Part shown: in pieces, positions 1 through 56,900 of the stretch
Layout: the number at the start of each line of letters is the position of its first letter
Position numbering within the stretch: the first letter of the stretch is position 1
Assembly: GCA_950097015.1 (NCBI GenBank)
Contig: CATNEN010000003.1
Location: forward strand, 7,688,001-7,752,000
Source: Macrostomum hystrix
Taxonomy: Eukaryota > Animalia > Platyhelminthes
Length of the DNA stretch: 64,000 nucleotides
Reading direction: 5' to 3'
The notes under the pieces: model-generated
What the model was told of the DNA's origin: nothing
The model's input: the letters and a program-made list of their open reading frames with translations, nothing else
Database searches by the model: none
Position numbers and translations under genes: made by a program

Positions 1-3000
1 GGCTGCTTTGTACAACTGCCTTCTGGCTATCGCGGCTTGGCGCCAATCAGAGCGTTGGCTAGCGAACATCCGCCATTTCCACTGAAGGATCTGTTTAGTA
101 CCGGCCAGACTGTTGTTGCTAAGGTATGGGTGTGGGTCTGTGGGATCATAATGTTTTTCCCCTTGACAATTCTCCATTCCCCCCTTTGACGATTCTTCAT
201 TCCCCCCTTTGATAATTCTCCACTCTCCCCCTTTGACAATTCTGCATTCTTACACTTTGCCAATTTTCCACTCTTCCTCCACTCTTCCCTGACAATTTTG
301 CATTCTTCGACAATTCTCCACTCTCCCCATTTGAAAATTCTCCACTCTCCCCCTTTGACAATTCTCCACTCTCCCCCTCTGACAATTCTCCACTCTTCCC
401 CTCTGACAATTCTCCACTCTTCCACTCTGACAATTCTCCACTCTCCCCATTTGACAATTCTCCACTCTCCCCATTTGACAATTCTCCACTCTCCCCATTT
501 GACAATTCTCCACTCTCCCCATTTTACAATTCTCCACTCTCCCCATTTGACAATTCTCCACTCTCCCCATTTGACAATTCTCCACTCTCCCCATTTGACA
601 ATTCTCCACTCTTCCAATTTGACAATTTTCCACTCCCCCTTTGACAATTCTCCATTCTTCCACGTCGACAGTTCTCCACTCTTCCACTTCGACAATTCTG
701 CACTACGTCCCCTTCGACGATTCTTCACTCTTCTACTTTGACAATTCTCAACTCTCCCTGACAATTATCCACTCTCTCCCTTTGAAAATTCTCCACTCTT
801 CCCCTTTGACAACTCTACAATCTTCCCTATGAGAATTCTCCACTCTTCGCCTTTGAGAGTTCTCTACTCTTCCCCTTTAAGAATTATTTTATATCATCCT
901 TTCACATTGCTCCACTCTTCCCCTGGTGAATTAGCCTCTAACATGGTTTTTAGCTATTAAATAAGTTTTTAACGAACCTTGTCAGGTGTTGGAAAAGAAC
1001 GCCGAGAAGCGTCGCTGCCTGTTGTCCCTGCGAGTTCGCGACTGCGTTCGTCCTTCAAAAGATCTGGACGATTCCCTGCTTCTATTAGAAGACACTCTGC
1101 GACTGTTAGATTCTGGCGGATTGTGTCCTAACGACTTACTGCCTGGTCGTCTAGTTCGAGTTGTGGCCACTGCCGACGGTGGTGACAGCGGAGCTAGAAG
1201 TTTTCGTCTACTTGATGGCAAGACCAAGGTACTAGATGCACTCTTGCATTTCTTGTGCACTCTTATCGCAGTCCTGCACTCTTATAGAACTTTTAGCACT
1301 TTTCTTATAGCACTTTTTAGTACTCATGTACTTTTATAGTTCTCTTGCACTTTTTTACTACTGCTGCACTTTTTAGTACTCTTGCACTTTTTAGTACTCA
1401 TGCACTATTATAGTACTTCTGTAATTTTTAAGTATTCCTGCACTCTTGCTCTTTTAAGTACTAATGTACTTTTATAGTACTCTTGCACTTACTACTGCTG
1501 CACTTTTATAGTACTCTTGCACTTTTTAGTACTCGTGCACTATTATAGTGCTCCTGTACTTTTTAAGTATTCCTGCACTCTTGCACTATTATAATGCTCA
1601 TTCTCGTGTACTTTTGTAGTACTCGCAGTTCTTGTTTTCGCAAATTCATAGTTTTTATATATATCAACACCAATTGCTCAGGCGCAAAAGTACACGTGCA
1701 AGGCCGACGCCAATCATTTGTTGGGCGCTGATTGCGCAGCCGGCAGTCGTCACACAGCCCTGGTGCTGTCTGTCAACCCCGTTGAAAAAATAGTCAGCGT
1801 ATGCCTAAGACCCGATCTACTTAGCCAACTAGCTGCTGCCCAGTCTACCGCCCGTGTTGCCGACGTGTCTCCGGGTGAAGCCTACTCTGCCGAGGTGCTC
1901 TACGCTGGAGCCGATTATCGCATGCTGGCACTGAGACTGGGGCCAACCACACAACAGGTGGCCTTTCTGCCAGCTAGAAGAGTGAGTCTGCTTGCTTTTT
2001 AATCTGACATTCTTATCTCTATCCGTGTTTAGCAATCTATCGACAATCTAACCTTCTAGTATCTACCCCTTTCACCTGACTTTCTCCTCTCTACCCCATT
2101 ACCCACCTTTCTATCCACCCATTTACCTACTTTTCTATCTACCCATTGATCTACCTTTCTCTCTACCAATTAGGCTACCCTTCTCTCTACCAATTAGGCT
2201 ACCTTTATCTTTACCAATTAGGCTACCTTGCTCTCTGCCAATTAGGCTACCTTGCTCTCTACCACTTAGGCTACCTTGCTATCTAACAATTAGGCTACCT
2301 TGCTCTCTACCACTTAGGCTACCTTGCTATCTAACAATTAGGCTACCTTGCTCTCTACCAATTAGGCTACCTTGCTATCTACCAATTAGGCTACCTTGCT
2401 CTCTACCACTTAGGCTACCTTGCTCTCTACCACTTAGGCTACCTTGCTATCTACCCATTGACCTACCTTTCTCCCTAACACTAGACTTCCTCTTTTTCTC
2501 CTTGACCTACCTCTTAAAAGTTTGTGTCATTTTCTGAACACTGTCCTAACTTAAATTGAATTTTAATTTGTTCATTTGTCTATCGTTTTATTTAATAACT
2601 CTCTGTTCTATTCTGCTATTCTGTTTTGTTAATAAAAATCGAATCTAATGTTCATCCTAACAGCACTGGAACGAGTCATATTCAGCTTGTAGTCCAACAG
2701 TTGGCTCTCAAATAAAAGTAGTTGTCCAACGTATCATTCGCGGCGGCGGCAGCTGCGAGACCGGTGGCCAATCAGCAGCAACAACAGCAGCAGCAGATAC
2801 AGGCGTTGGTTTGTATCGTTTAACAGCACTGCAATCTGAATACTCTAAAGCTGAAGGATTTCGCCATCTCGCCCCATCGTCTGTGGGCAATGGAACTGTT
2901 GCTAAGACGGGGCCAGCACTGTCTAAACGAAACGTTGTCATTGGCGAGGCTTTTGTTGTGCGGTGAGAGACTTTCTTACTACTTCTTAAAGTAGGTATTA

Positions 3001-6000
3001 GTTTCTCACGATCTTATATCTAGACCAACCGACTTTGAACCCATTGTAGAGTTGTGGCCATCACTAACTGCCAGTTGAATGTCGAAGATCTGCATTCGCG
3101 CACTAAAGGCCGAATCTTTATCACCGAATTGACTGATTCACCTCAGCAGATGATCAATCCGTTGACAGCTTTCAGTGTTGGCCAGGAGCTGCTGGCTAGA
3201 GTGGTCGGAATTAGGCCTGACCGCATTCACGAAGAGTAAGTAGTCTTGTCACGAAATTCTTATTTAACATTTGACTCACTAGATGATTGTTGATTGACAT
3301 TTGAGTCACTAGATGATTGTTGATTGACATTTGAGTCACTAGATGATTGTTGATTGACATTTGAGTCACTAGATGATTGTTGATTGACATTTGAGTCACT
3401 AGATGATTGTTGATTGACATTTGACTCAGGAGATGATTTTTGATTGACATTTGACTCACTAGATGATTGTTAATTGACATTTGACTCACTAGATGATTGT
3501 TGATTGACATTTGACTCACTAGATGATTGTTGATTGACATTTGACTCACTAGATGATTGTTGATTGACATTTGAGTCACTAGATGATTGTTGATTGACAT
3601 TTGACTCACTAGATGATTGTTGATTGACATTTGAGTCACTAGATGATTGTTGATTGACATTTGAGTCACTAGATGATTGTTGATTGACATTTGACTCAGG
3701 AGATGATTTTTGATTGACGTTTGACTCACGAGATGATTGTTGATTGACATTTGACTCAGGAGATGATTTTTGATTGACGTTTGACTCACGAGATGATTGT
3801 TGATTGACATTTGACTCACTAGATCAGTATTGATTGACATTTGACTCACTAGATCAGTATTGATTGACATTGGACTCACTAGATCAGCATTGATTGACAT
3901 TTGAGTCACTAGATGATTGTTGATTGACATTTGACTCAGGAGATGATTTTTGATTGACGTTTGACTCACGAGATGATTGTTGATTGACATCCCGGTTGCC
4001 AAACCAAAGGGCTTTTTTCATGCAAGTATGGGCTTTTCAGTGGGCCAACAGTGGGCCAGTGCCTTTTAGCCCAATTTGCGGGCTTTTTGCCCAGTTTCGG
4101 CCCACATATAGATGGGCCAACAAGTGGCCCACATAGGCCCATTAAGAGCCCATTAATAATTGGCCCATATAACGAGCCGAATGTCCAATTCAGCCCACTT
4201 TCGGCCCACTATTGTGACCCAAGAATGCTGGCCCATATTGGCCCACATGCGCTGGCCCATATTGGCCCACATATGCTGACCCAGATTGGCTCACATATAC
4301 TGGCCCATATTGGCCCACATATACTGCCACATATACTGGCCCATATTGGCCCACATATACTGCCACATATACTGGCCCATATTGGCCCACATATACTGGC
4401 CCATATACTGGCCCATATTGGCCCACATATACTGCCACATATACTGGCCCATATTGGCCCACATATACTGGCCCATATTGGCCCACATATACTGCCACAT
4501 ATACTGGCCCATATTGGCCCACATATACTGCCACATATACTGGCCCATATTGGCCCACATATACTGGCCCATATTGGCCCACATATACTGGCCCATATTG
4601 GCCCACATATACTGGCCCATATTGGCCCACATATACTGCCACATATACTGGCCCATATTGGCCCACATATACTGGCCCATATTGGCCCACATATACTGCC
4701 ACATATACTGGCCCATATTGGCCCACATATACTGCCACATATACTGGCCCATATTGGCCCACATATACTGGCCCATATTGGCCCACATATACTGGCCCAT
4801 ATTGGCCCACATATACTGGCCCATATTGGCCCACATATACTGGCCCATATTGGCCCACATATACTGCCACATATACTGGCCCATATTGGCCCACATATAC
4901 TGGCCCATATTGGCTCACATATGCTGGCCCATATTGGCCCACATGCGCTGGCCCATATTGGCCCACATATACTGGCCCATATTGGCCCACATATACTGGC
5001 CCATATTGGCCCACATATACTGGCCCATATTGGCCCACATATACTGGCCCATATTGGCCCACATATACTGGCCCATATTGGCTCACATATGCTGGCCCAT
5101 ATTGGCCCACATATACTGGCCCATATTGGCCCACATATACTGGCCCATATTGGCCCACATATACTGGCCCATATTGGCCCACATATGCTGGCCCATATTG
5201 GCCCACATATACTGGCCCATATTGGCCCACATATACTGGCCCATATTGGCCCACATATACTGGCCCATATTGGCCCACATATACTGGCCCATATTGGCTC
5301 ACATATGCTGGCCCATATTGGCCCACATATACTGGCCCATATTGGCCCACATACGCTGGCCCATATTGGCCCACATATACTGGCCCATATTGGCTCACAT
5401 ATGCTGGCCCATATTGGCCCACATATACTGGCCCATATTGGCTCACATATGCTGGCCCATATTGGCCCACATATACTGGCCCATATTGGCTCACATATGC
5501 TGGCCCATATTGGCTCACATATGCTGGCCCATATTGGCCCACATATACTGGCCCATATTGGCTCACATATGCTGGCCCATATTGGCCCACATATACTGGC
5601 CCATATTGGCTCACATATGCTGGCCCATATTGGCCCACATATACTGGCCCATATTGGCTCATGCAAAAGGATTTAAATAGCCAATGCGTATGCTTGTCAA
5701 TGGCTAGATAAATGGATTGTTTTTTCACTAGCATTCGAATACGTTTTTTATGACTTTAAAGTCCAAGTTGCACAGCGCAAATGATGTAACTTTGTTTAAT
5801 ATCACAATGAAATATAAGCCAAGGCCACGGCTAAGCAGCAGAAGGCCTCCGAAAAAGCGGCTCAGACGGCCAAGCCAAGGAAACCCGCTGTACGCAAGAA
5901 TGTCGACTTGGACGCCAACAGCAACTTCGGCCACGCAGACCACACAGACCAGCTGAAGAGGTCTGCAGCTGCAATTGATGAGTGCAGCGCTGAATCCAAG

Positions 6001-9000
6001 CGGGTCCGGTGCACGGAAGACCCACTGCCGCCGAGCGCATCAGCTGCTGCAGACGTAACTGACGAGGATGGTCAACAGAACCGAAAAGCTAAACGGTTTC
6101 CGCTACAGCAGCGGAAGATTCCGCCTGCTGATGCTTCCGCTAGTCCAGTTGCCATCGCTGCGCCTGCTATCCAGAGTGACAGCTTCTGGGTAGTCACTTA
6201 CTGCTCTTCAAATTCTCTGCAGGTGAGCGAATCTGAAATTTTAGCATCCCTACATGCAGATGCAGATGTACGTGTGCAGTATACCGACATGTCGATATCA
6301 TGATCGGATTCCACGATCCCACTTGAATGCCACTGATCTACATTCTCAGGTTGTGAGCGCAAAAAACATTGTCTCGCCGGCCGTACCTGCCCAACGAGCT
6401 ATCGGCGCGGCGGTTGATGTCGTCACGGGACGCAGCATTGGCGCCAAAAAGCATCGCGCTTTTATTACCGCAGGCCCCTTTCGAATACGAAAGGATGCAA
6501 CGTCTGCCATGGGCCGCATCGTGCACCAGGCTTCCACCGCCGCTTCGTCGTCAACAGGCCGCCCTAATTCGAGTAATCGAAGCGTCCTTAGCACGACGAC
6601 AATTAATGTGCCAGACGGTGACTGCGTACGCTGCAGAAATCTGGAAGTTGAGTGTCACAAGCTCCGCAGCGGCGTTCAGGATGCCCAGAAGCGAACAGAC
6701 GCAGAAATTGAAACAAACAGGCGCCTAAATGATGAGCTTGAGGCTCTCAAAAATCTGAACGAGACTCTGATTCAAGATCTCAAAGATAGAGACGCCGTAA
6801 TAACCCAGAATCACGACTTACTGGCTGACTACGACACTCGCCTACAGACTGCCGTTGATTTCAACGAGCGTTTGACGAACGCTATACGCACCCTGGGCCG
6901 CAGTACACTGCAGGCCGACAGAGTTGCCCGACTTATGGTCGACTCAGGCAAGCAGGCGTTGCAATATGGCCACGAACTATTGAGGCAGTTAAACGCCACA
7001 TGGGAAGCACTACCCAACAGTATAATGGCGCATTCAACCGGAGGGCCTGCTGTGTCTGCAGATAGCAACTGTGTTGGTTCTGATGTACTTCCGTCAGATA
7101 CCCACGACGCTACAGTTTTGCCGTCTAGCATCGACTCCAGCACCGACGATGCCGGCAGATCTTCATTTGTGTGCCAGCTGGGCATCTCAGCGGCAATAGA
7201 TTCAATGGGACTATCGCGATCGTCAGCTGCTCAGCGGACAGCCGCTCATGCCATCGCGGATGCCGATGTCCTTGTGCCCTTAGTAAGCAGCATCCCTACT
7301 GTGACGGTTTCCACCACTAAGCTAAACAAAATTGAGGCCGCCGTCAGCGCATACAAGGCGGCGGATACCAGCCAAAAGCTGCGCGGCACGATGCTCCGCA
7401 CACTTTTCCGAGGCGTCCTGACTGTTGCCGACTTCAGTGGCTCTTCCTGGGAAGGGCGCCAGAGCAAAAAATCAAACAAGCCAAACAGGCCGGGATTGGA
7501 CGAGACGAAAAAGCGGGCCATCCGAGCTTATCTACTAGAGAAAAAATTGGACGTAAGCTGTACACTAACTGTTTCTTTTTCTTTTTCTTTTCTTTAGTAC
7601 ATAATATTATGTGCATTGCTGTTCTACACTAGTTGTACTACTATTTTGGGCGATTTAGTGCAGCGTCATGTCTACAGCATCGGAATACATTGTATATAAA
7701 CTGTTAGAATATTAGTTTTTCATTACTTCACTTTCTTCGTTCTCACACAGACCAAACGCTTGCCGGATACTCTACTGGGCAGCGTTTTCAGGCGCACGGC
7801 CCGTACGCAGAGGGGACTGCAGACCGTTACCGCCGCCGATGTCCCGACTGCCGCGGCAGCTGGTGCCTCCGTTGTCGGCGACAACGCTGGCGCCGCAGCT
7901 ACTGCCACTGTTGCCGCCGGAGCCGGCGAAAACGATGCCGCCGATATCGATCCTTAAGCGATTGTTCCCCGCAGTGATTTTGTAACTGATTTGTTCGTCT
8001 TGAAGGTTTCAAAGTGATAAAGTATCGATTAAGGGTTGAAGGTACTCGATCCCGAGTATATATATATATCCCAATCCCGATCCCGATCCCGAGAATATAT
8101 ATGATGATGATGCGGCGATGATGGGTCTGAGACCCAGGGCCCCGGCGAGTGCGGCGATGATGGGTCTGAGGCCGCAGGCCCCAGAGACGGGGTTCGTCGG
8201 CACGCCTTAGGCGGCATATTCGAAGGAAAGACGGCGGCTGAAATTCGAGCGGATTACAATCGGCTTCCAGAGAGAAGCTCCGGGCCGGCCTGTGTGCATG
8301 TCTGCCGACGCAAAGAGGACAGACTGGAGCTCCAGGCGCACTGTTGTCCGGACTGCGAGGCCTGGTTTGCCGATCTGTCGCCTGAGAGTCGAAGAAAGAG
8401 GCTACAGGTGGCCGGCAGGCATCGCAGCAACCAGCCGAAGATTCGAACTGGCGATGCCCAGTTTTGGGCAATCGAGATGCCCCCTACACCCCCTGAAGCG
8501 CCTATCGAAGCTATGAAGTCGTTGCCTCGTCGTAAGCGGCCATTGCGGGATCTGTCAGCTGCTGAAGCGAAGAAGAAAACCTAGACTATAGATGCAGCGG
8601 AGAGTATGTGGTTATGAAAACCAAATGTGTCCTACATGACTGAACCTTTCAGTCAACCAATCAATCCATGCGTTACAATCTTTCTATTAATTTGTTTCCT
8701 ACTTGTATCCTACACATGTTGCTGTGCAAGTTTTGCGCAATACAAGCATTGCTCATTCACAATCCATTCACAATTAGTTACATGGCAAGTAAATATTTAA
8801 GAGGCAAGCCGTATTAAAGAGAAATAGGTACTTGTTTTTTATAGTAATTAGTAATTACTTTGGCCCTATGCGCTATAATATATGGACCAGCCAATATGGG
8901 CCAGCGTATGTGGGCCAATATGGGCCAGTATATGTAGGCCAATATAGGCTGGGATATGTGGCAGTATATGTGGGCCAATATGGGCCAGTATATGTGGCAG

Positions 9001-12000
9001 TATATGTGGGCCAATATGGGCCAGTATATGTGGCAGCATATGTGGGCCAATATGGGCCAGTATATGTGGGCCAATATGGGCCAGTATATGTGGCAGCATA
9101 TGTGGGCCAATATGGGCCAGTATATGTGGGCCAATATGGGCCAGTATATGGGTCAGTATATGTGGGCCAATATGGGCCAGTATATGTGGGCCAATATGGG
9201 CCAGTATATGTGAGCCAATATGGGCCAGCATATGTGGGCCAATATGGGCCAGTATATGTGGGCCAATATGAACCAGCGTATGTGGGCCAATATGGGCCAG
9301 TATATGTGGGCCAATATGGGCCAGCATATGTGGGCCAATATGGGCCAGTATATGTGGGCCAATATGGGCCAGTATATGTGGCAGCATATGTGGGCCAATA
9401 TGGGCCAGTATATGTGGGCCAATATGGGCCAGTATATGTGGCAGTATATGTGGGCCAAAATGGGCCAGTATGTGTGGGCCAATGTGGGCCGGTATATGTG
9501 GCAGTATTTGTGGGCCAATATGGGCCATCAAGGGCCAGTGTATACAAGCCAAAATGGGCCGCCGTGTATGGGCCTGTATGGGCCGCCGTGTACGGGCCTG
9601 TATGGGCCGCCGTGTATGGGCCTGTAAGGGCCGCCGTTTATGGGCCTGTGTGGGCCGCCGTGTACGGGCCTGTACGGGCCTCCGTATGAGCCGCCGTGTG
9701 ACCCGGTGTCTGCCATTAAACACTTTCTGGGTCAGCGTGGGTCAATGTGGGCTTTCTGTGGGCCGCTCAGAACCAAACTTTGGCCCACTAGTGGGCCAAA
9801 AAATGTGGCCCATTCAACTTTTTTTGGCAACCGGGCATTTGACTCACTAGATCAGTGTTGATTGACATTTGACTCACTAGATCAGTATTGATTGACATTT
9901 GACTCACGAGATGATTGTTGATTGACATTTGACTCACTAGATCAGTATTGATTGACATTTGACTCACTAGATCAGTGTTGATTGACATTTGACTCACTAG
10001 ATCAGTATTGATGGACATTTGACTCACTAGATCAGTATTGATTGACATTTGACTCACTAGATCAGTATTGATTGACAATTGACTCACTAGATCAGTATTG
10101 ATTGACAATTGACTCACTAGATCAGTATTGATTGACAATTGAATCACTAGATCAGTATTGATTGACATTTGACTCACTAGATCAGTATTGATTGACAAGT
10201 GACTCACTAGATCAGTATTGATTGACAATTGAATCACTAGATCAGTATTGATTGACATTTGACTCACTAGATCAGTATTGATTGACAAGTGACTCACTAG
10301 ATCAGTATTGATTGACATTTGACTCACTAGATCAGTATTGATTGACAATTGACTCACTAGATCAGTATTGATTGACAATTGACTCACTAGATAAGCATTG
10401 ATTGATATTTGATCAGTAATTATTGAAATTAGTTTGTCTCAAGACTAACCTTCAGCTAGCAAAATCAGTGTAGCCTTGAATTGATATTCTCTTCCTAAAA
10501 CGTCAACCCGCAGTCCGTCGCACCCGTTGGGTGGCAAGCGGTCAAGTCTCTACGAACTGTCAGCTAGGCCATCTGTTCTGGCTAGACCCGGCAATGATTT
10601 CAAAGATCTATTCGACCTGCCGCTTAGCAACCAGTCGGAAATGTGGCTCTACGTTCAACACGCCGATGCTAAATTACGCACGGTGTCCATGTACGCCGCT
10701 ATTAACAAGACTTTATCCGTACCCTATTTGGATGTTAGCAATGATTTAGATCAGTTGGCTAAACTGTCGAAATTCTTGCCGTATGGAGCCGCTATGAAGG
10801 CATGGCCGATATCTTTTGCAAACACAATCGATAATGCTCCTAGCAATGCTGAGGATTTTACCGTCGACTCAATAAAAGGATTACGTGTCACCTGTCTGGG
10901 TCCTGATGCTTGTCTGCCTTTGAAGGTAAACTATTAATATGACTTTTACATAAAACAATAGATCAACTTCATAACAATTTGCGAGAAAATATAGAATTAT
11001 GTGTAATTAAACCTTGAGAAATTACTGTTTTGTAAATCTCTATTCTATTGGTTATGTTAAAGGCTGGGGTCATCGGCCCATTAGTTTGAAAACCGATTTT
11101 TAGAGGGTTTCCCAACTGGATGTTTCTAAAAATAGCACACTAATCGATTTCAAAGTGCTCTTCAAACTACTCTACTAATAGTGGCAGTATAAGTATTTTT
11201 ATTCGATGTTTTTTATTACCAATTTATTTGAGCAATCAGACACCAATCGATACAGAAGTTTCATGCCCATGCGCATGTTAAAAAAGTAGAAAACCGTTTT
11301 TAAAAGGGTTTCCCAATGAATTGTTTCTAAAAATAGCACTACCTAACCTATCGATTTGAAAGTTTCATGACCATTATTAACCCATTTGAAATAATTAAAT
11401 ATTGCTTTTAGCTAAAAGCCTGTAAGGGAGTTTCCCAATCAAATGTTCTAAAAATAGTTACCATAGAATATATTCTTATCGACCAATCAAATTTGAGTGT
11501 AAATACATGAGGTTATATTTGTAAGGGGTTTCTCAGACTAAATATTTCTAAAAATAGCTACAACTAGATTTTCCTAGCTAGCTAACATGTTGAACCCAAT
11601 AAAACAATTGACTCACCGCCCACGCAACTAATCACTAAGGCTGGCGATTGCGTTGCAACCTACGTCACCTCGGCTAGCCAGTTTTTCTACCGAGCCAAAC
11701 TATCAGCTAATCGGTCTGGCCAGTTACACGCCTTAGATATGCACCCGTCTAGGCCTGCCGACATTGCCGACCTATGCAAAGCCGCTGCTCGTTATCACCG
11801 ACTACCGATTGGCACTTCCAATAGGCGCCGAGCTCCATTTATGCTAGCCGAAGTGATTCGTGTCGACGGCAGACTTCATTGGCTTAGACCAGTATTGACT
11901 GACGCGTCTGAATCGAATAGTCTAGCAACAAATGAAGGCGCGAATTCGAATGTTATTCTTGTTGGCTACGTTGCTAGGCAATGCGATCGAGGCCTGGCAG

Positions 12001-13885
12001 TCACATTCGGCGGCGCTAAACGCACCGGCGTTGTAAAAGTTCCCGGCAGAGCTAGACGGCTGTTTCCTATTGGCCGGCGGATTCATTGCAGTCCGTTAGT
12101 GACCGAATCGGAGAACACTTCTAGCGACTCGCGCACTAGACTGTATCGACTAGAAGAACCTATTCCAACGGCTGGTAAGAAACGCCCTCATGGTGAAAAC
12201 AACGACGAGGCCATTGCTGAAGCCGGAGCTTCTTACAAGATTAAGCGTCGACGTTTAAAATTGACAAAATCGGCTGCCAACGATATTGTCACGCAGACTG
12301 ATTTAGTCAATGGAGTGCTTGTTGTCACGCACAACGATCCGATTATTCAGAAGCCAAACAAATTAGTAGTTTCAAATATCTATTCGCCATTGAAACTTGA
12401 CGAAGCTGACGAGAATCTGAATGAAGGCGACATCGTTGACTCCGTCGACCATGGCGACCATGGCGAGAAGGCTACTAGCAAACGCAATCGACGTCAAGGC
12501 GAGACCACTAGGCAAGAATTTGAAAGTTTAGTTTCCAGGGAGCCAGGCAATCCGTCTCATTGGACAGATTACGCGCGTTACCATAGCGACGCTGAAGAAT
12601 TTGACGCCGCCAGATCTGTTATCGAACGCGGCCTAGTTGCCGTTGGTAAATTGGGAGCCGGCGACACTTCAGACGCTGGTAGGCGTCAACTGTACCGATC
12701 GCTACTGCTTCTAGAAGCTAAAGCTGTTGGCAATGCTACTGCGGATACTGATCCGGACTCGCTTGATAGACTCATTCAAGCTACTCATCGCGCCTGCCAG
12801 TTGCAAGATCCGGCACTTTGCCGACTAGCCGCCACCACTCTGTTAGACTGCGGCGAGGGCGACAAAGCGGAAACTGTTGCCGTGAAATTGAGGCGAGCCA
12901 GGCCCGACTGTCCGAAGGCGTGGCGACTGCAATTGGAGGTTGGGAAAATCTGAATGTGTTGACTAATATAAGTACGAGATATAGAAATTACTAGTGGGCC
13001 AACGGGCACGTCATTTGGTGACATTAGATCCGCAGCCAGCGAGGAGGCAATTCCATTTCGCTGACTCCTGAGCACATACTCACACAGTTGTGTACATCTG
13101 CCTAGACTTTCTCATCGTCAGGCAGTGTACACTCTCACTGTGCCTTGGATGTTTGGCCCTGAAGGGCGTAAATTGCACGACAAGCCCCCCAAGCCTTCTC
13201 TCTGCGGCTGCGCCCCAAATGAAATGTGGCCTCGCCGCGGAATCGAGCTCCGGGACCTGACCCCCAAACTGTACAGATGCAGCCTGTACAGATGCAGCCT
13301 GTATAGATACAACCTGTACAGGTACGACCTGTACAGATACAACCGGTACACTCGTATTTATCCCATGTTTAAAGCGCATTTATCCCCATTCCCAATGCAT
13401 CCCAGGTGAAGCTTCGCCGCGGTCGCAACGACGATGCCAAGCGTCTGCTATTCGACCAGGCCTTATCATCTCTACCCAAGCGGCATCATCTCGGCCTGTT
13501 GAGCGGCTTCGCCGAGTTAGCCTTCCGTCACGGTCGCCGCTCCGACGGTGTGGCCACATTTGAGAGTCTACTCAAATCGCATCCGAATCGTCCGGAGCTC
13601 TACCTACTGTACGGTCGCTGCCTGCTGTCAAATGAGGGCGGCATGGGCGGCGGCGGTTTGAGCGCGGCTAAAGATCTTCTGGATCGTGCTAAAACTGTAC
13701 TGCCAGTAGATAATAAACAGCTGCTAGCTCTTGACGAGCTTATTGGCAAAGCTACGGCTAGCGCTGATGACCGCAAAGCAAGAACCGATGCTGCTGCCGC
13801 TGCTGTTGCAGCCACTTCAGAGTCTACCTTTGCCAAGTCGTCTGCCCTGATGATTGACGACAATGATTTCAACCTGATGGAATGA
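1..13885 (+). CDS. PDCD11: RRP5/PDCD11 homolog (S1-repeat + C-terminal HAT-repeat ribosome biogenesis factor), 5'-truncated by the window; exons 1-123, 986-1228, 1682-1981, 2664-2962, 3050-3235, 10514-10925, 11640-12938, 13406-13885
   Basis: Exons 1+2 read GCFVQLPSGYRGLAP...FSTGQTVVAK|VLEKNAEKRRCLLSLR, an S1 repeat closely like PDCD11. FESLVSREPGNPSHWTDYARYH...ARSVIERGL and LPKRHHLGLLSGFAELAFRHG match the RRP5 HAT region. All listed junctions are GT-AG and phase-consistent. Confidence 0.85.
160..870. repeat. 24-bp intronic minisatellite (TTGACAATTCTCCACTCTCCCCAT)
   Basis: Tandem copies visible directly, degenerate at the edges. Confidence 0.9.
1250..1625. repeat. Degenerate ~19-20-bp tandem repeat (GCACTTTTTAGTACTCTT-like)
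   Basis: Recurring gcactt/tagtact motif in an RRP5 intron. Confidence 0.65.
2100..2470. repeat. 24-bp minisatellite (TAGGCTACCTTGCTCTCTACCAAT)
   Basis: Tandem copies visible. Confidence 0.85.
3268..3990. repeat. 30-bp minisatellite, left half (TGATTGACATTTGACTCACTAGATGATTGT)
   Basis: Tandem units, interrupted at 3991 by a transposon. Confidence 0.95.
4228..5660 (+). repeat. Left subterminal array of the transposon, 24-bp unit GGCCCATATTGGCCCACATATACT with 12-bp GCCACATATACT inserts
   Basis: Tandem array visible directly. Confidence 0.95.
5684..7957 (+). CDS. Transposon-borne coiled-coil + BEN-domain protein, predicted ~605 aa; exons 5684-5687, 5819-6222, 6350-7552, 7751-7957
   Basis: CAG|GTGAGC (6223) to TTCTCAG| (6349) and GAC|GTAAGC (7553) to CACACAG| (7750) join three open frames in phase. 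The C-terminal LRTLFRGVLTVADFSGSSWEG...RPGLDETKKRAIRAYL...LLGSVFRRTARTQR fits the BEN pattern, with CxxC + coiled coil upstream. The 4-nt first exon is tentative. Confidence 0.65.
8111..8584 (+). CDS. CtIP/Sae2 (RBBP8) C-terminal-domain-like ORF inside the transposon; frame open 8111-8584 but no in-frame ATG ahead of the domain
   Basis: VCRRKEDRLELQAHCCPDCEAWFADLSPESRRKRLQVAGRHR...FWAIEMPPTP aligns motif for motif with the CtIP C-terminus (VRKKEERRKL.GH.CxxC.YYAD...RHR...FWEVGFPST). Confidence 0.7.
   Translation, partial: CGDDGSETQGPGECGDDGSEAAGPRDGVRRHALGGIFEGKTAAEIRADYNRLPERSSGPACVHVCRRKEDRLELQAHCCPDCEAWFADLSPESRRKRLQVAGRHRSNQPKIRTGDAQFWAIEMPPTPPEAPIEAMKSLPRRKRPLRDLSAAEAKKKT
8886..9700 (-). 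repeat. Right subterminal array (reverse complement of the left 24-bp unit), followed by a GGGCCGCCGTGTATGGGCCTGTAT variant block
   Basis: AGTATATGTGGGCCAATATGGGCC units are the reverse complement of the left array. Confidence 0.95.
9836..10410. repeat. 30-bp minisatellite, right half (variant ...CTAGATCAGTAT...)
   Basis: Continues in register after the TSD. Confidence 0.95.
11095..11560. repeat. Four spaced degenerate copies of AGGGTTTCCCAA...TTTCTAAAAATAGC
   Basis: Motif recurs near 11104, 11306, 11426 and 11526. Confidence 0.55.
12990..13260 (-). mobile_element. tRNA-derived SINE-like fragment, family B (5'-truncated)
   Basis: Shares AAGGGCGTAAATTGCAC and CCTCGCCGCGGAATCGAGCTC.GGGACCT with 37102-37205. 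The minus strand gives a B-box-like GAGCTCGATTCC. Confidence 0.5.
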
Positions 13886-14234
13886 GTTTTTTTCCCTGTT
13901 CAGTTTGGCACTTGAAGCATTTGTTGACAATTTATCAAATAAGTTTAAGTCGACGCACTTTCTCTTCCATCTTCTTGATGAGCACTCGAAATTGCATCAA
14001 GGGGTGCAATTAAATTCTGGCCGCATTAAAAAGTGAAGTGAAGCTTTCTTTCTTTTGGAAGTTGTTACTCTGGTCTTTTTATTTTTGCGCTTGGGATTAA
14101 AATAGTACTAGGTTCCGGTTAACGCATTGATCCGCAAATAGTCATATCCCTTGTGCTTACTAATTCTACTGCTTATCCGCCGTTTAACAATTCATCAGTT
14201 TAATGTTAATCCGATTTCAAATGTCAATCGATAA

Positions 14235-14690
14235 ACTGTCCTCTAATCCTTCAGCATTTTATCGCTAATCTGTCCTCTAATCCTTCAGCCCAGCCTTTTA
14301 TCGCTAATCTGTCCTCTAATCCTTCAGCATTTTATCGCTAATCTGTCCTCTAATCCTTCAGCATTTAATCGCTAATCTGTCCTCTAATCCTTCAGCATTT
14401 AATCGCTAATCTGTCCTCTAATCCTTCAGCATTTTATCGCTAATCTGTCCTCTAATCCTTCAGCATTTAATCGCTAATCTGTCCTCTAATCCTTCAGCCT
14501 TTTATCGCTAATCTGTCCTCTAATCCTTCAGCATTTTATCGCTAATCTGTCCTCTAATCCTTCAGCATTTAATCGCTAATCTGTCCTCTAATCCTTCAGC
14601 CTTTTATCGCTAATCTGTCCTCTAATCCTTCAGCCTTTTATCGCTAATCTGTCCTCTAATCATTCAGCATCTAATCGCTAATCCATCCCT
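14235..14690. repeat. 34-bp minisatellite (CTAATCTGTCCTCTAATCCTTCAGCATTTTATCG)
   Basis: Tandem copies. Confidence 0.9.
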
Positions 14691-50921: not shown

Positions 50922-53900
50922 GATTCATCTTCAAATATCCTAGAGATCCGTCCTCAAATATCCTAGAGATCCATCTTCAAATATCCTAGAGATCCGTCCT
51001 CAAATATCCTAGAGATCCATCTTCAAATATCCTAGAGATCCGTCCTCAAATATCCTAGAGATCCGTCCTCAAATATCCTAGAGATCCATCTTCAAATATC
51101 CTAGAGATTCATCTTCAAATATCCTAGAGATCCGTCCTCAAATATCCTAGAGATCCGTCCTCAAATATCCTAGAGATCCGTCTTCAAATATCCTAGAGAT
51201 CCATCTTCAAATATCCTAGAGATCCGTCCTCAAATATCCTAGAGATCCGTCCTCAAATATCCTAGAGATCCGTCTTCAAATATCCTAGAGATCCGTCTTC
51301 AAATATCCTAGAGATCCATCTTCAAATATCCTAGAGATCCGTCCTCAAATATCCTAGAGATCCGTCCTCAAATATCCTAGAGATCCATCTTCAAATATCC
51401 TAGAGATTCATCTTCAAATATCCTAGAGACCCGTCCTCAAATATCCTAGAGATCCGTCCTCAAATATCCTAGAGATCCGTCTTCAAATATCCTAGAGATC
51501 CGTCCTCAAATATCCTAGAGATCCGTCCTCAAATATCCTAGAGATCCATCTTCAAATATCCTAGAGATTCATCTTCAAATATCCTAGAGACCCGTCCTCA
51601 AATATCCTCGAGATTCATCTTCAAATATCCTAGAGATCCGTATTCAAATATCCTAGAGATCCATCTTCAAATATCCTAGAGATCCGTCCTCAAATATCCT
51701 AGAGATCCGTCCTCAAATATCCTAGAGATCCGTCCTCAAATATCCTAGAGATCCGTCTTCAAATATCCTAGAGATCCGTCTTCAAATATCCTAGAGATCC
51801 GTCTTCAAATATCCTAGAGATCCGTCTTCAAATATCCTAGAGATCCATCTTCAAATATCCTAGAGATCCGTCGTTAAATATCCTAGAGATCCGTCTTCAA
51901 ATATCCTAGAGATCCATCTTCAAATATCCTAGAGATCCGTCGTTAAATATCCTTGAGATCCCTCTTCAAATATCCTAGAGATCCGTCGTTAAATATCCTA
52001 GAGATCCGTCTTCAAATATCCTAGAGATCCGTCTTCAAATATCCTAGAGATCCGTCTTCAAATATCCTAGAGATCCGTCTTCAAATATCCTAGAGATCCG
52101 TCTTCAAATATCCTAGAGATCCGTCTTCAAATATCCTAGAGATCCGTCTTCAAATATCCTAGAGATCCGTCTTCAAATATCCTAGAGATCCGTCTTCAAA
52201 TATCCTAGAGATCCATCTTCAAATATCCTAGAGATCCGTCGTTAAATATCCTAGAGATCCCTCTTCAAATATCCTAGAGATCCGTCGTTAAATATCCTAG
52301 AGATCCGTCTTCAAATATCCTAGAGATCCGTCGTTAAATATCCTAGAGATCCCTCTTCAAATATCCTAGAGATTCATCTTCAAATATCCTAGAGATCCGT
52401 CGTTAAATATCCTAGAGATCCGTCCGTAAATATCCTAGAGATCCGTCTTCAAATATCCTAGAGATCCGTCTTCAAATATCCTAGAGACCCGTCCTCAAAT
52501 ATCCTAGAGATCCATCTTCAAATATCCTAGAGATCCATCTTCAAATATCCTAGAGATCCGTCTTCAAATATCCTAGAGATCCATCTTCAAATATCCTAGA
52601 GATCCGTCTTCAAATATCCTAGAGATCCGTCGTTAATTATCCTAGAGATCCCTCTTCAAATATCCTAGAGATCCGTCGTTAAATACCCTAGAGATCCGTC
52701 GTTAAATATCCTAGAGATCCGTCTTCAAATATCCTAGAGATTCATCTTCAAATATCCTAGAGACCCGTCCTCAAATATCCTCGAGATTCATCTTCAAATA
52801 TCCTAGAGATCCGTCTTCAAATATCCTAGAGATCCGTATTCAAATATCCTAGAGATCCATCTTCAAATATCCCAGAGATCCGTCCTCAAATATCCAAGAT
52901 TCATCTTCAAATATCCTAGAGATCCATCTATAAATATTCTAGAGATCCGTCTTCAAATATCCTAGAGATCCGTCTTCAAATATCCTAGAGATCCGTCTTC
53001 AAATATCCTAGAGATCCGTCCTCAAATATCCTAGAGATTCATCTTCAAATATCCTAGAGATCCGTCTTCAAATATCCTAGAGATCCGTCCTCAAATATCC
53101 TAGAGATTCATCTTCAAATATCCTAGAGATCCGTCTTCAAATATCCTAGAGATCCGTCCTCAAATATCCTAGAGATCCATCTTCAAATATCCTAGAGATC
53201 CGTCCTCAAATATCCTAGAGATCCGTCTTCAAATATCCTAGAGATCCATCTTCAAATATCCTAGAGATCCGTCTTCAAATATCCTAGAGATCCATCTTCA
53301 AATATCCTAGAGATCCGTCCTCAAATATCCTAGAGATCCGTCTTCAAATATCCTAGAGATCCGTCCTCAAATATCCTAGAGATCCATCTTCAAATATCCT
53401 AGAGATCCGTCCTCAAATATCCTAGAGATCCATCTTCAAATATCCTAGAGATCCGTCTTCAAATATCCTAGAGATCCATCTTCAAATATCCTAGAGATCC
53501 GTCCTCAAATATCCTAGAGATCCATCTTCAAATATCCTAGAGATCCATCTTCAAATATCCTAGAGATCCATCTTCAAATATCCTAGAGATCCGTCTTCAA
53601 ATATCCTAGAGATCCGTCTTCAAATATCCTAGAGATCCGTCTTCAAATATCCTAGAGATTCATCATCAAATATCCTAGAGATCCGTCCTCAAATATCCTA
53701 GAGATCCGTCTTCAAATATCCTAGAGATCCGTCTTCAAATATCCTAGAGATCCGTCTTCAAATATCCTAGAGATCCATCTTCAAATATCCTAGAGATCCG
53801 TCTTCAAATATCCTAGAGATCCATCTTCAAATATCCTAGAGATCCGTCGTTAAATATCCTAGAGATCCCTCTTCAAATATCCTAGAGATCCGTCGTTAAA

Positions 53901-56900
53901 TATCCTAGAGATCCGTCTTCAAATATCCTAGAGATCCGTCTTCAAATATCCTAGAGATCCGTCGTTAAATATCCTAGAGATCCGTCTTCAAATATCCTAG
54001 AGATCCATCTTCAAATATCCTAGAGATCCGTCGTTAAATATCCTAGAGATCCGTCCTCAAATATCCTAGAGATCCGTCTTCAAATATCCTAGAGATCCGT
54101 CTTCAAATATCCTAGAGATCCATCTTCAAATATCCTAGAGATCCGTACTCAAATATCCTAGAGATCCGTCTTCAAATATCCTAGAGATCCGTCTTCAAAT
54201 ATCCTAGAGATCCATCTTCAAATATCCTAGAGATTCATCTTCAAATATCCTAGAGATCCGTCCTCAAATATCCTAGAGATCCGTCCTCAAATATCCTAGA
54301 GATCCGTCCTCAAATATCCTAGAGATCCGTCTTCAAATATCCTAGAGATCCGTCCTCAAATATCCTAGAGATCCGTCCTCAAATATCCTAGAGATCCATC
54401 TTCAAATATCCTAGAGATCCGTCTTTAAATATCCTAGAGATCCCTCTTCAAATATCCTAGAGATCCGTCGTTAAATATCCTAGAGATCCGTCTTCAAATA
54501 TCCTAGAGATCCATCTTCAAATATCCTAGAGATCCGTCGTTAAATATCCTAGAGATCCATCTTCAAATATCCTAGAGATCCATCTTCAAATATCCTAGAG
54601 ATCCATCTTCAAATATCCTAGAGATCCGTCGTTAAATATCCTAGAGATCCATCTTCAAATATCCTAGAGATCCATCTTCAAATATCCTAGAGATCCATCT
54701 TCAAATATCCTAGAGATCCGTCCTCAAATATCCTAGAGATCCGTCTTCAAATATCCTAGAGATCCGTCTTCAAATATCCTAGAGATCCGTCTTCAAATAT
54801 CCTAGAGATCCGTCTTCAAATATCCTAGAGATCCGTCTTCAAATATCCTAGAGATCCGTCTTCAAATATCCTAGAGATCCGTCTTCAAATATCCTAGAGA
54901 TCCGTCTTCAAATATCCTAGAGATCCATCTTCAAATATCCTAGAGATCCGTCCTCAAATATCCTAGAGATCCGTCTTCAAATATCCTAGAGATCCGTCTT
55001 CAAATATCCTAGAGATCCGTCTTCAAATATCCTAGAGATCCATCTTCAAATATCCTAGAGATCCGTCGTTAAATATCCTAGAGATCCGTCGTTAAATATC
55101 CTAGAGATCCGTCGTTAAATATCCTAGAGATCCGTCTTCAAATATCCTAGAGATCCGTCGTTAAATATCCTAGTGATCCGTCGTTAAATATCCTAGAGAT
55201 CCGTCTTCAAATATCCTAGAGATCCGTCTTCAAATATCCTAGAGATCCATCTTCAAATATCCTAGAGATCCGTCTTCAAATATCCTAGAGATCCGTCCTC
55301 AAATATCCTAGAGATCCGTCCTCAAATATCCTAGAGATCCGTCCTCAAATATCCTAGAGATCCGTCCTCAAAAATCCTAGAGATCCGTCTTCAAATATCC
55401 TAGAGATCCGTCTTCAAATATCCTAGAGATCCGTCTTCAAATATCCTAGAGATCCGTCTTCAAATATCCTAGAGATCCGTCCTCAAATATCCTAGAGATC
55501 CGTCCTCAAATATCCTAGAGATCCGTCCTCAAATATCCTAGAGATCCGTCTTCAAATATCCTAGAGATCCGTCTTCAAATATCCTAGAGATCCGTCTTCA
55601 AATATCCTAGAGATCCGTCTTCAAATATCCTAGAGATCCATCTTCAAATATCCTAGAGATCCGTCGTTAAATATCCTAGAGATCCGTCTTCAAATATCCT
55701 AGAGATCCATCTTCAAATATCCTAGAGATCCGTCGTTAAATATCCTTGAGATCCCTCTTCAAATATCCTAGAGATCCGTCGTTAAATATCCTAGAGATCC
55801 GTCTTCAAATATCCTAGAGATCCGTCTTCAAATATCCTAGAGATCCGTCTTCAAATATCCTAGAGATCCGTCTTCAAATATCCTAGAGATCCGTCGTTAA
55901 ATATCCTAGAGATCCGTCTTCAAATATCCTAGAGATCCGTCTTCAAATATCCTAGAGATCCATCTTCAAATATCCTAGAGATCCGTCTTCAAATATCCTA
56001 GAGATCCGTCCTCAAATATCCTAGAGATCCGTCCTCAAATATCCTAGAGATCCGTCCTCAAATATCCTAGAGATCCGTCCTCAAATATCCTAGAGATCCG
56101 TCTTCAAATATCCTAGAGATCCGTCTTCAAATATCCTAGAGATCCGTCTTCATATATCCTAGAGATCCGTCTTCAAATATCCTAGAGATCCGTCCTCAAA
56201 TATCCTAGAGATCCGTCCTCAAATATCCTAGAGATCCGTCCTCAAATATCCTAGAGATCCGTCTTCAAATATCCTAGAGATCCGTCTTCAAATATCCTAG
56301 AGATCCGTCTTCAAATATCCTAGAGATCCGTCTTCAAATATCCTAGAGATCCGTCTTCAAATATCCTAGAGATCCGTCGTTAAATATCCTAGAGATCCCT
56401 CTTCAAATATCCTAGAGATTCATCTTCAAATATCCTTGAGATCCGTCGTTAAATATCCTAGAGATCCGTCCTTAAATATCCTAGAGATCCGTCTTCAAAT
56501 ATCCTAGAGATCCGTCTTCAAATATCCTAGAGACCCGTCCTCAAATATCCTAGAGATCCATCTTCAAATATCCTAGAGATCCATCTTCAAATATCCTAGA
56601 GATCCGTCTTCAAATATCCTAGAGATCCATCTTCAAATATCCTAGAGATCCGTCTTCAAATATCCTAGAGATCCGTCGTTAATTATCCTAGAGATCCCTC
56701 TTCAAATATCCTAGAGATCCGTCGTTAAATATCCTAGAGATCCGTCGTTAAATATCCTAGAGATCCGTCGTTAAATATCCTAGAGATCCGTCCTTAGAAA
56801 TCCTAGAGATCCGTCTTCAAATATCCTAGAGATTCATCTTCAAATATCCTAGAGACCCGTCCTCAAATATCCTCGAGATTCATCTTCAAATATCCTAGAG

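What the first reader, a model, noticed from the sequence alone, without database searches (positions are those of the whole stretch)
8111..8584. Transposon carries a CtIP/Sae2 C-terminal (MRN-activating) domain
Seen: inside the TIR element an open frame encodes VHVCRRKEDRLELQAHCCPDCEAWFADLSPESRRKRLQVAGRHRSNQPKIRTGDAQFWAIEMPPTP...PRRKRP...KKKT*. Established: the conserved C-terminus of CtIP/Ctp1/Sae2 has the order VR.K.ER..L.GH.CxxC...YAD...RHR...TP..FW...FP.T and a basic tail. It activates Mre11 endonuclease to process hairpin-capped or protein-blocked DNA ends and commits breaks to resection. Here the CxxC, RHR and FW motifs are kept, but the CDK site (human T847-P) reads RTG, so the proline-directed consensus is lost. 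Inference: the element captured a host DSB-repair module that could open hairpins, bias repair of its excision site toward homologous restoration, or act as a dominant-negative MRN decoy, possibly uncoupled from cell-cycle control. I know of no described cut-and-paste transposon with this cargo. Caveat: no in-frame ATG precedes the domain (TGA at 8108), so it is either a spliced exon or decayed in this copy.
Basis: partly seen in the sequence, partly recalled or inferred. Interest (0 to 1): 0.92.

Follow-up and report, generated by a model that had tools for sequence, protein, structure and literature searches.

The report
Transposon copy with truncated CtIP-tail gene
A jumping-gene family in a Macrostomum-type flatworm carries its own gene copied from the tail of the host DNA-break-processing factor CtIP and kept by selection. 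The copy in this window has lost that gene's front half and its transposase, so here it is a relic.

Summary
Window 8111-8584 is an open frame inside a real cut-and-paste element (3991-9835; 13-bp TIRs, 3-bp TSD CAT).

Its last ~100 codons are a true CtIP/Sae2 C-terminal domain. Pfam alone is borderline (19.6 vs 19.8 bits). A profile of 11 genomic relatives finds 322 proteins in 1.84 billion, and the eight more distant hits I checked all carry Pfam SAE2, five of them with CtIP_N.

This is not a one-off capture. At least 36 places in the genome hold the domain (46-100% identity). At 21 or more loci it lies 2-7 kb downstream of a transposase homologue on the same strand. Synonymous sites between subfamilies are saturated while pN is 0.14-0.44, so selection has kept it.

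The nearest relative is the host's own CtIP (61% identity to the M. lignano orthologue). The host tail also lacks the CDK-type T-P site, so that loss is not special to the element.

In this copy a deletion removed the gene's start codon and N-terminal half. Transcript contigs run unspliced from the upstream gene's stop into it, so it is not a spliced exon.

How the intact protein works is inferred, not shown: probably a mini-CtIP/Ctp1 that engages MRN at transposase-made breaks.

No paper found reports such cargo. This scan has already noted it several times elsewhere in this genome.

The parts
3988..3990 (.). left target-site duplication CAT
   Evidence: CAT on both flanks. The 30-bp satellite continues on both sides of the element.
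3991..4003 (+). left terminal inverted repeat CCCGGTTGCCAAA
   Evidence: The same termini bound 7 elements in the genome, each with its own 3-bp TSD.
4200..5660 (+). left subterminal array of ~24-bp repeats
   Evidence: Inverted-repeat arms 4225-5661 against 8889-9530, 71-86% complementary.
5817..7957 (+). coiled-coil / faint-BEN gene, 5'-truncated here. Introns at about 6220-6346 and 7553-7750; stop at 7955-7957.
   Evidence: 99.8% identical to positions 4659-7146 of the 20.5-kb copy, whose ATG lies about 50 nt upstream of the breakpoint. Both splice joints appear in X6 contigs. BEN scores 16.5 bits, below the cut-off.
8111..8584 (+). 5'-truncated CtIP-tail gene: 157 open codons plus stop, with no start codon
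   Evidence: The full gene (285 aa, starting MDHWTHAA...) exists in copy C38:33660887-33681435 with an identical tail.
8112..8304 (+). segment present twice in the long copy; site of the deletion that removed the gene's 5' half
   Evidence: BLAST maps window 8112-8304 to both 6954-7146 and 8535-8727 of the long copy. The 1.4 kb between them is absent here.
8117..8134 (+). one remaining acidic DDGSET motif (3-6 tandem copies in intact relatives, one in host CtIP)
   Evidence: Motif count.
8249..8545 (+). SAE2/CtIP C-terminal domain, from ADYNRLP to RRKRPL; includes CPDC, RHR, FW and PPTP
8860..9530 (-). right subterminal repeat array, inverted relative to the left one
9823..9835 (-). right terminal inverted repeat
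9836..9838 (.). right target-site duplication CAT

Best explanation
Window 3991-9835 is a non-autonomous internal-deletion derivative of a three-gene cut-and-paste transposon in a Macrostomum-type flatworm. The three genes are a transposase, a coiled-coil/BEN-like gene and a CtIP-tail gene. The tail gene descends from the last coding exon of the host CtIP gene. It has been kept under purifying selection while the transposon clade diversified.

Intact versions encode about 285 aa in four parts: a short N-terminal CxxC plus coiled coil, tandem acidic DDEGSET repeats, the ADYNRLP motif, and the full CxxC-RHR-F[WF]-PxTP CtIP/Sae2 C-terminus. This layout resembles fission-yeast Ctp1.

Inferred mechanism: the protein acts as an element-encoded mini-CtIP. 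It engages host Mre11-Rad50-Nbs1 at the breaks or hairpin-capped flanks left by excision. Donor sites would then be opened and resected, which favours cell survival and homology-directed refilling of the element.

In this particular copy one deletion removed the transposase. A second deletion, between two copies of a 192-bp segment, removed the tail gene's start codon and N-terminal half. The frame at 8111-8584 is therefore a young relic, most likely untranslated, carried in the 3' part of the upstream gene's transcript.
For: Homology:
- The profile of 11 tails finds 322 proteins at E<=1e-3 in 1.84e9, matching their C-termini.
- Of ten hits scanned, nine carry Pfam SAE2 (E 1e-12 to 1e-7) and five also carry CtIP_N. 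The tenth, P0003 (the M. lignano orthologue), has no Pfam hit at E<=0.001.
- 7 of 11 tails hit PF08573 on their own at E<=0.1, best E 1.3e-5.
- Pairwise E is 1e-11 to a long CtIP-type protein and 7e-37 to M. lignano Mlig004387.

Transposon:
- 7 elements share the termini, each with a different perfect 3-bp TSD.
- A related subfamily has TIR CCCGGTTGAAAAA and TSD CTG.

Linkage:
- Tail loci lie 2-7 kb downstream of, and on the same strand as, transposase homologues of 31-62% identity at 21 or more loci.

Selection:
- Between subfamilies pS is 0.64-0.93 (saturated) and pN is 0.14-0.44. Where computable, omega is 0.06-0.30.

Origin:
- Element tails plus the host CtIP (G000 C39:3400457-3402441 and M. 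lignano P0003) form one clade with 100/99 support, apart from all other CtIPs.
- The host gene has an N-terminal coiled-coil exon and no transposase hit nearby in the genome-wide list.

Truncation:
-.
- The three window-type copies share the same 157-codon frame.

RNA:
- X6 contigs are spliced at both introns of the upstream gene, run unspliced across 7751-8145, and cover 8128-8729.

Mechanistic link:
- In yeast, Ac/Ds excision leaves hairpins, and no revertants were recovered without Mre11 or Sae2 (PMC3299998).
Against: No experiment or binding prediction supports MRN engagement. The mechanism rests on analogy with CtIP, Ctp1 and Sae2.

The element tails and the host tail lack the T-P site that in human CtIP (T847; from my own knowledge) licenses activity, so regulation may differ.

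The element protein has no detectable CtIP_N tetramerisation domain.

Whether this transposase makes hairpins is unknown. Its superfamily is not established: there is no Pfam hit, including Transposase_21, and the AF2 model is poor.

Tail and transposase divergences disagree. A3-type tails are 73% identical to this one but their transposases only 35%. C-type tails are 55% identical but their transposases 60-62%. Gene order also differs between subfamilies. The association therefore involves module shuffling, not simple co-descent.

The only long copy of this subfamily carries an in-frame stop in the transposase and a 10-kb nested insertion.

Contigs cannot show which copy is transcribed.
Confidence: 0.6

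Rival explanations
1. Decoy or antagonist. The element protein keeps the MRN-contacting tail but lacks the host CtIP N-terminal tetramerisation domain. It would compete with host CtIP and dampen resection at transposition intermediates, for example to protect excised element ends or to favour end joining.
For: No CtIP_N hit in the 285-aa protein, whereas the host orthologue has an N-terminal coiled coil. Tandem amplification of the acidic DDEGSET motif would suit a high-avidity competitor.
Against: The element protein has its own conserved N-terminal CxxC plus heptad-like stretch in four subfamilies, so self-association is not excluded. Nothing distinguishes activation from inhibition at sequence level.
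Confidence: 0.17
2. DNA-binding accessory factor. The CxxC/RHR region, which binds DNA in Ctp1 (from my own knowledge), has been re-used as a TnpA-like protein. It would bind the element's subterminal 24-bp repeat arrays and help synapse the ends, independently of MRN.
For: Very long subterminal repeat arrays need a binding protein. RHR and the Cys pair are invariant or nearly so across subfamilies.
Against: The co-resident coiled-coil/BEN-like gene is the more obvious array binder. Conservation extends over the whole CtIP tail, including F[WF]..MP.TP and RRxRPL, not only the DNA-binding motifs.
Confidence: 0.13
3. Passive cargo. The CtIP fragment was picked up by chance and has no role for the element; open frames survive only because the copies are young.
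For: This copy, its two sisters and three shorter derivatives carry truncated, start-less versions. Several other copies have stops.
Against: Subfamilies with saturated synonymous sites still keep 46-74% protein identity, invariant motifs and open frames. Linkage to the transposase holds at 21 or more loci.
Confidence: 0.05
4. The frame 8111-8584 is the last exon of the upstream coiled-coil/BEN gene, giving a fusion protein.
For: Same strand, about 150 nt downstream of that gene's stop, with no ATG of its own.
Against: One spliced X6 contig crosses 7552/7751 and then runs colinear to 8145, through the TAA at 7955-7957, with no joint. In the long copy and in other subfamilies the tail is a stand-alone ORF with its own ATG. 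In C-type elements it lies upstream of the BEN-like gene.
Confidence: 0.05

Closest known systems
CtIP / RBBP8 / Com1 / Ctp1 / Sae2 C-terminal domain (Pfam PF08573)
   Same: Colinear over about 100 residues: [DS]F[DN]R[VL]P-like ADYNRLP, V.RK..ER..L, H.C..C, [YW][YF]A, RHR, F[WF], P.T and a basic RRxRP[LY] end. Reciprocal profile hits to CtIP_N+SAE2 proteins.
   Different: Encoded by a transposon as a protein of about 285 aa, without the CtIP_N domain. There is no T-P before F[WF], which the Macrostomum host CtIP also lacks. The position matching human S-T859-Q reads T-P. The acidic DDEGSET motif is tandemly amplified.
Host CtIP of Macrostomum (M. lignano Mlig004387, PAA54340.1 / PAA88737.1; G000 C39:3400457-3402441)
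   Same: 61% identity over the tail. Shares the DDEGSET, SPVFN and ADYNRLP motifs. Forms one clade with the element tails.
   Different: Single-copy, multi-exon gene with an N-terminal coiled coil. No transposase hit nearby in the genome-wide list. 82% identity between the two species over the last exon.
S. pombe Ctp1 (short CtIP orthologue; architecture from my own knowledge)
   Same: Similar size and order: N-terminal oligomerisation coil, acidic S-x-T motifs (which bind the Nbs1 FHA domain in Ctp1), and a C-terminal CxxC/RHR domain.
   Different: No sequence relation outside the C-terminal domain was tested or seen. The role of the S-E-T repeats here is only an analogy.
CACTA/EnSpm (CMC) transposons with accessory genes (TnpA/TnpD)
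   Same: 3-bp TSD, long subterminal repeat arrays, several genes on one strand, frequent internal-deletion derivatives. The protein-atlas neighbours of the transposase carry Transposase_21 (score 0.95).
   Different: Termini are CCCGGTTG, not CACTA. There is no HMM match to Transposase_21 in any of four subfamilies. No CACTA accessory protein is known to me to be a CtIP relative, and none was found in papers.

Membership tests
SAE2/CtIP C-terminal domain (PF08573) | Scores at or above Pfam's gathering cut-off (19.8 bits) | tested here: inconclusive
   19.6 bits for the 157-aa frame, 20.3 bits for the 130-aa piece, and 17.1 bits for the 285-aa protein. 7 of 11 family members match at E<=0.1, best E 1.3e-5.
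SAE2/CtIP C-terminal domain (PF08573) | Profile of the family retrieves bona fide CtIP proteins at their C-termini | tested here: met
   322 hits at E<=1e-3, 22 at E<=1e-10. Nine of the ten hits scanned carry SAE2, five of them with CtIP_N.
SAE2/CtIP C-terminal domain (PF08573) | Conserved CxxC, RHR and F[WF]...P.T motifs in the canonical order | tested here: met
   Alignment A1: C52, C55, R78 and F91 are invariant and H77 nearly invariant. Colinear with CtIP segments.
SAE2/CtIP C-terminal domain (PF08573) | CDK-type T-P/S-P site just before F[WF] (human T847; from my own knowledge) | tested here: not met
   The window reads KIRTGDAQFW. Other subfamilies read RDPNFF or QAPNFF. The host CtIP reads VQAPNFF.
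Full-length CtIP orthologue | N-terminal CtIP_N tetramerisation coiled coil | tested here: not met
   No CtIP_N hit in the 285-aa element protein. This copy lacks any N-terminal part.
CMC / CACTA / EnSpm transposon superfamily | 3-bp (2-3 bp) target-site duplication | tested here: met
   Seven of seven elements: CAT, TAG, AAT, TCT, TTG, TAG, TTA. The C-type relative has CTG.
CMC / CACTA / EnSpm transposon superfamily | CACT[AG] termini | tested here: not met
   Termini are CCCGGTTGCCAAA and CCCGGTTGAAAAA.
CMC / CACTA / EnSpm transposon superfamily | Transposase matches Transposase_21 (PF02992) | tested here: not met
   No hit at E<=10 for the long copy's ORF or for P0001 and P0002. No hit at E<=0.01 for three paralogues. 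The genome's 15 PF02992 matches lie at other loci. The only lead is atlas similarity of 0.95.
CMC / CACTA / EnSpm transposon superfamily | Subterminal repeat arrays and several genes on one strand | tested here: met

The most novel reading that the evidence does not exclude
A clade of animal DNA transposons has turned the tail of the host's CtIP into its own constitutive MRN co-activator. The protein would carry multimerised Nbs1-docking motifs and no CDK gate. The element could then direct how its own excision breaks are opened and repaired, in any cell-cycle phase. That would be a transposon-encoded DNA-repair pathway-choice factor.
Probability: 0.3. Interest if true: 0.85.

Novelty: new variant of a known kind. 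Interest (0 to 1): 0.6.

Why it matters
Cut-and-paste transposons are usually thought to rely wholly on host break repair. Here an element family carries a selectively maintained copy of the factor that switches on Mre11 end processing. That would be a direct case of a mobile element manipulating repair-pathway choice at its own excision sites.

It would also supply a compact natural CtIP tail of about 100-285 aa, without the usual CDK site, for studying MRN activation.

For genome annotation, the 36 or more CtIP-like hits in this genome are transposon genes. The single host gene lies on C39.

The copy in this window adds little by itself. It shows how such elements decay by internal deletion and keep being mobilised.

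Tried and rejected
- Pfam scans of the putative transposase: four subfamily ORFs plus the two database relatives gave nothing.
- Genome-wide PF02992 search: it hit only unrelated loci.
- AlphaFold2 on the transposase core with a 6-row alignment: mean pLDDT 43.7, too poor for a fold search, so none was run.
- Word-indexed protein searches: the transposase, its alignment and the 285-aa tail protein returned only M. lignano and JGI relatives without Pfam labels.
- Search for the host CtIP through PF08573 in six frames: it returned only members of the element family and the host exon. The best hit, on C25, proved to be a decayed element copy next to a transposase fragment.
- A 'solo' TIR on C32: a chance match inside coding sequence.
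- Wastewater RNA-library contigs (X1-X3): X1 contigs run colinear through both introns, so they may be DNA or unspliced RNA. I did not count them as expression.
This stopped a profile-profile test against the genome's true Transposase_21 ORFs and a wider tail-versus-transposase co-phylogeny.
- No complex prediction was sent. Host Mre11, Rad50 and Nbs1 sequences could not be obtained by reference.
Full report
**Observation.** TGA lies at 8108-8110 and no in-frame ATG precedes the conserved part. It lies inside a bounded element. The 13-mer CCCGGTTGCCAAA occurs in the window only at 3991 (+) and 9823 (-), against 0.03 matches expected. Long inverted arms of about 24-bp tandem repeats follow each end. 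The element interrupts a 30-bp satellite with a CAT/CAT duplication.

**Is the domain a CtIP/Sae2 tail?** Pfam alone is borderline.
- SAE2 (PF08573) scores 19.6 bits (E 0.0021) against a cut-off of 19.8 for the frame.
- It scores 20.3 bits for the last 130 residues.

The own genome is 220 Mb in 42 contigs, and the window is C3:7688001-7752000. It holds at least 36 places matching the tail at 46-100% identity, most of them open. I aligned 11 intact tails from about six subfamilies (A1).
- 7 of the 11 match PF08573 on their own at E<=0.1, best E 1.3e-5.
- The A1 profile, scored against 1.84 billion representative proteins, gave 322 hits at E<=1e-3 and 22 at E<=1e-10. Nearly all lie at the extreme C-terminus of proteins of 300-1500 aa.
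- I scanned ten of those hits. Nine carry Pfam SAE2 (E 1e-12 to 1e-7) and five also carry CtIP_N. The exception, P0003, is the M. lignano orthologue and has no Pfam hit at E<=0.001.
- Pairwise BLASTP of the window tail gives E 1e-11 over residues 792-891 of an 893-aa CtIP-type protein.

The match is colinear over the whole domain: ADYNRLP, V.RR..DR.EL, H.C..C, W[FY]A, RHR, F[WF], MP.TP, RRxRPL. The homology is real.

**Where did it come from?** The closest database proteins are Macrostomum lignano Mlig004387 g2 and g1 (P0003, P0153). The window tail is 61% identical to them (E 7e-37). P0153 has an N-terminal coiled coil. It maps to G000 C39 in two blocks:
- 3402082-3402441, at 57% identity;
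- 3400457-3400969, at 82% identity.

No transposase homologue lies near that locus in the genome-wide list. I take it as the host CtIP gene, and the genome as a Macrostomum-type flatworm that is not M. lignano itself.

In a maximum-likelihood tree of the domain, the element tails and the two host sequences form one clade (100/99) on a long stem, apart from 49 other CtIP tails. Inside it the host pair (99/94) and three element subclades are unresolved. The element tails also share with the host's last exon the motifs DDEGSET, SPVFN and ADYNRLP. The simplest reading is capture of the host's last coding exon within the macrostomid lineage.

The host tail also lacks a T-P before FF (VQAPNFF). The missing CDK-type site is therefore a lineage trait, not a property of the element.

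**Is it part of the transposon or a passenger?** Seven elements in the genome are bounded by the same TIR. Each has a different perfect 3-bp TSD: CAT, TAG, AAT, TCT, TTG, TAG, TTA. Six are 4.1-6.9 kb and one is 20.5 kb (C38:33660887-33681435).

The long copy carries, on one strand:
- a 1005-codon transposase-like frame, 57% identical to an M. lignano protein;
- the coiled-coil/BEN-like gene;
- a partial duplicate of the tail;
- the full tail gene of 285 aa;
- about 10 kb of nested foreign sequence inside the right arm.

Across the genome, tail loci lie 2-7 kb downstream of, and on the same strand as, transposase homologues of 31-62% identity at 21 or more loci. A C-type relative has TIR CCCGGTTGAAAAA and TSD CTG.

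Between subfamilies, synonymous differences are saturated (pS 0.64-0.93) while pN is 0.14-0.44. Where dS can be computed, omega is 0.06-0.30. The tail gene is therefore an old, selectively maintained component of a transposon clade.

The association is not simple co-descent.
- A3-type tails are 73% identical to this one but their transposases only 35%.
- C-type tails are 55% identical but their transposases 60-62%.
- The BEN-like gene lies upstream of the tail here and downstream of it in C-type elements.

Modules have been exchanged.

**What is this particular copy?** BLAST against the long copy shows the following:
- Window 3991-5817 matches its left end.
- Window 5817-8304 matches its 4659-7146 at 99.8%.
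- Window 8112-9309 matches its 8535-9706.

The transposase region (long-copy 976-4658) is therefore gone, together with the ATG of the BEN-like gene. The 1.4 kb between two copies of a 192-bp segment is also gone. That 1.4 kb holds the tail gene's ATG, its N-terminal DHWTHAA-CxxC-coil and most of the acidic repeats.

Two sister copies (C26, C38:24.3 Mb) share the same 157-codon frame. Three shorter derivatives keep only the last 42 codons.

**RNA.** Contigs of run X6 (organism B) carry both introns of the upstream gene spliced out: 6220-6346 and 7553-7750. One such contig then runs colinear from 7751 to 8145, through the TAA at 7955-7957. Another covers 8128-8729. The tail is therefore not spliced onto the upstream ORF, and here it most likely rides as untranslated 3' sequence. 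Contigs cannot tell which copy is expressed.

In the three wastewater RNA libraries, contigs carry the full gene's upstream sequence ahead of 8123. X1 contigs also run straight through both introns, so I do not count these libraries as expression.

**Mechanism (inferred).** The intact protein has the layout of a short CtIP such as Ctp1: a small N-terminal Cys pair plus heptad stretch, 3-6 tandem acidic S-E-T motifs (one in the host protein), and the complete C-terminal domain. In Ctp1 and MDC1, acidic S-x-T motifs dock Nbs1 after CK2 phosphorylation, and the CtIP/Sae2 tail activates Mre11-Rad50 endonuclease (my own knowledge). In yeast, Ac/Ds excision leaves hairpin-capped flanks, and no revertants were recovered without Mre11 or Sae2 (PMC3299998).

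I therefore favour an element-encoded MRN co-activator acting at excision breaks. The structural and evolutionary parts I hold at about 0.9. The mechanism itself I hold at about 0.35.

Rivals are an MRN decoy, a TnpA-like binder of the subterminal repeats, passive cargo (disfavoured by selection), and a spliced fusion exon (disfavoured by RNA).

**Classification of the element.** The 3-bp TSD, subterminal arrays, multi-gene layout and deletion derivatives resemble CACTA/EnSpm (CMC). The protein atlas places the transposase next to Transposase_21 clusters (0.95). Against that:
- the termini are not CACTA;
- no HMM match to PF02992 was obtained for any subfamily;
- the AF2 model was unusable.

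I call it CMC-like but unclassified. The long copy's transposase has an in-frame stop at codon 661, where three paralogues read through.

**Novelty.** Three full-text searches found no report of a transposon-borne CtIP/Sae2 gene. The scan's own earlier notes describe the same cargo in other pieces of this genome. My results agree with them and add the following:
- the host-gene locus;
- the 3-bp TSD series;
- the deletion mechanism for this copy;
- the splice evidence;
- the module shuffling;
- the DDEGSET amplification.

**Limits.** This limited the transposase classification and the co-phylogeny.

Noticed in passing
window 3270-3990 and 9836-10390: The element sits in a 30-bp satellite (unit TTTGACTCACTAGATGATTGTTGATTGACA) that continues in phase on both sides. 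This gives a clean empty-site reconstruction.
   Followed up: partly
window 5816 (X6 contig): A transcript contig carries 27 nt (CATGCTGGCCGATCCTAGTCTGCAGCC) ahead of 5816. They occur neither in the window nor in the 20.5-kb copy. This could be a trans-spliced leader or an exon from another copy's flank. The position coincides with the deletion breakpoint and an AG.
   Followed up: partly
G000 C38:33660887-33681435 (L039-L041, L044): The only long copy of this subfamily has an in-frame stop at transposase codon 661. It also has about 10 kb nested in its right arm, including a 1422-aa ORF with PWWP and a CHHC zinc finger and further minisatellites.
   Followed up: partly
G000 C1:11068695-11082438 (L055+L056, local 695-14438): A C-type relative of 13.7 kb with TIR CCCGGTTGAAAAA and TSD CTG. 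Its gene order is transposase, tail, BEN-like gene, which is the reverse of the last two genes in the window's subfamily.
   Followed up: partly
tails of subfamilies A, A2, B, F (L012, L013, L017, L033) and host exon L021: An acidic DDEGSET motif is single in the host CtIP of both Macrostomum species. It is tandemly repeated 3-6 times in the element proteins.
   Followed up: partly
runs X1-X4: Four wastewater 'metatranscriptome' libraries hold 55-74% of the sampled words of window 5700-8700. Their contigs match at 95-100% identity, so this flatworm or a close relative was in those samples.
   Followed up: no
window 6254-7597: The upstream gene has a strong coiled-coil region and only a faint BEN match (16.5 bits, cut-off 23.2). 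Homologues of 33-36% identity sit in other elements of the clade.
   Followed up: partly
window 51000-64000: Very uniform composition (GC 0.38-0.39, GC skew about -0.35 in every 1-kb bin) suggests one long tandem array.
   Followed up: no
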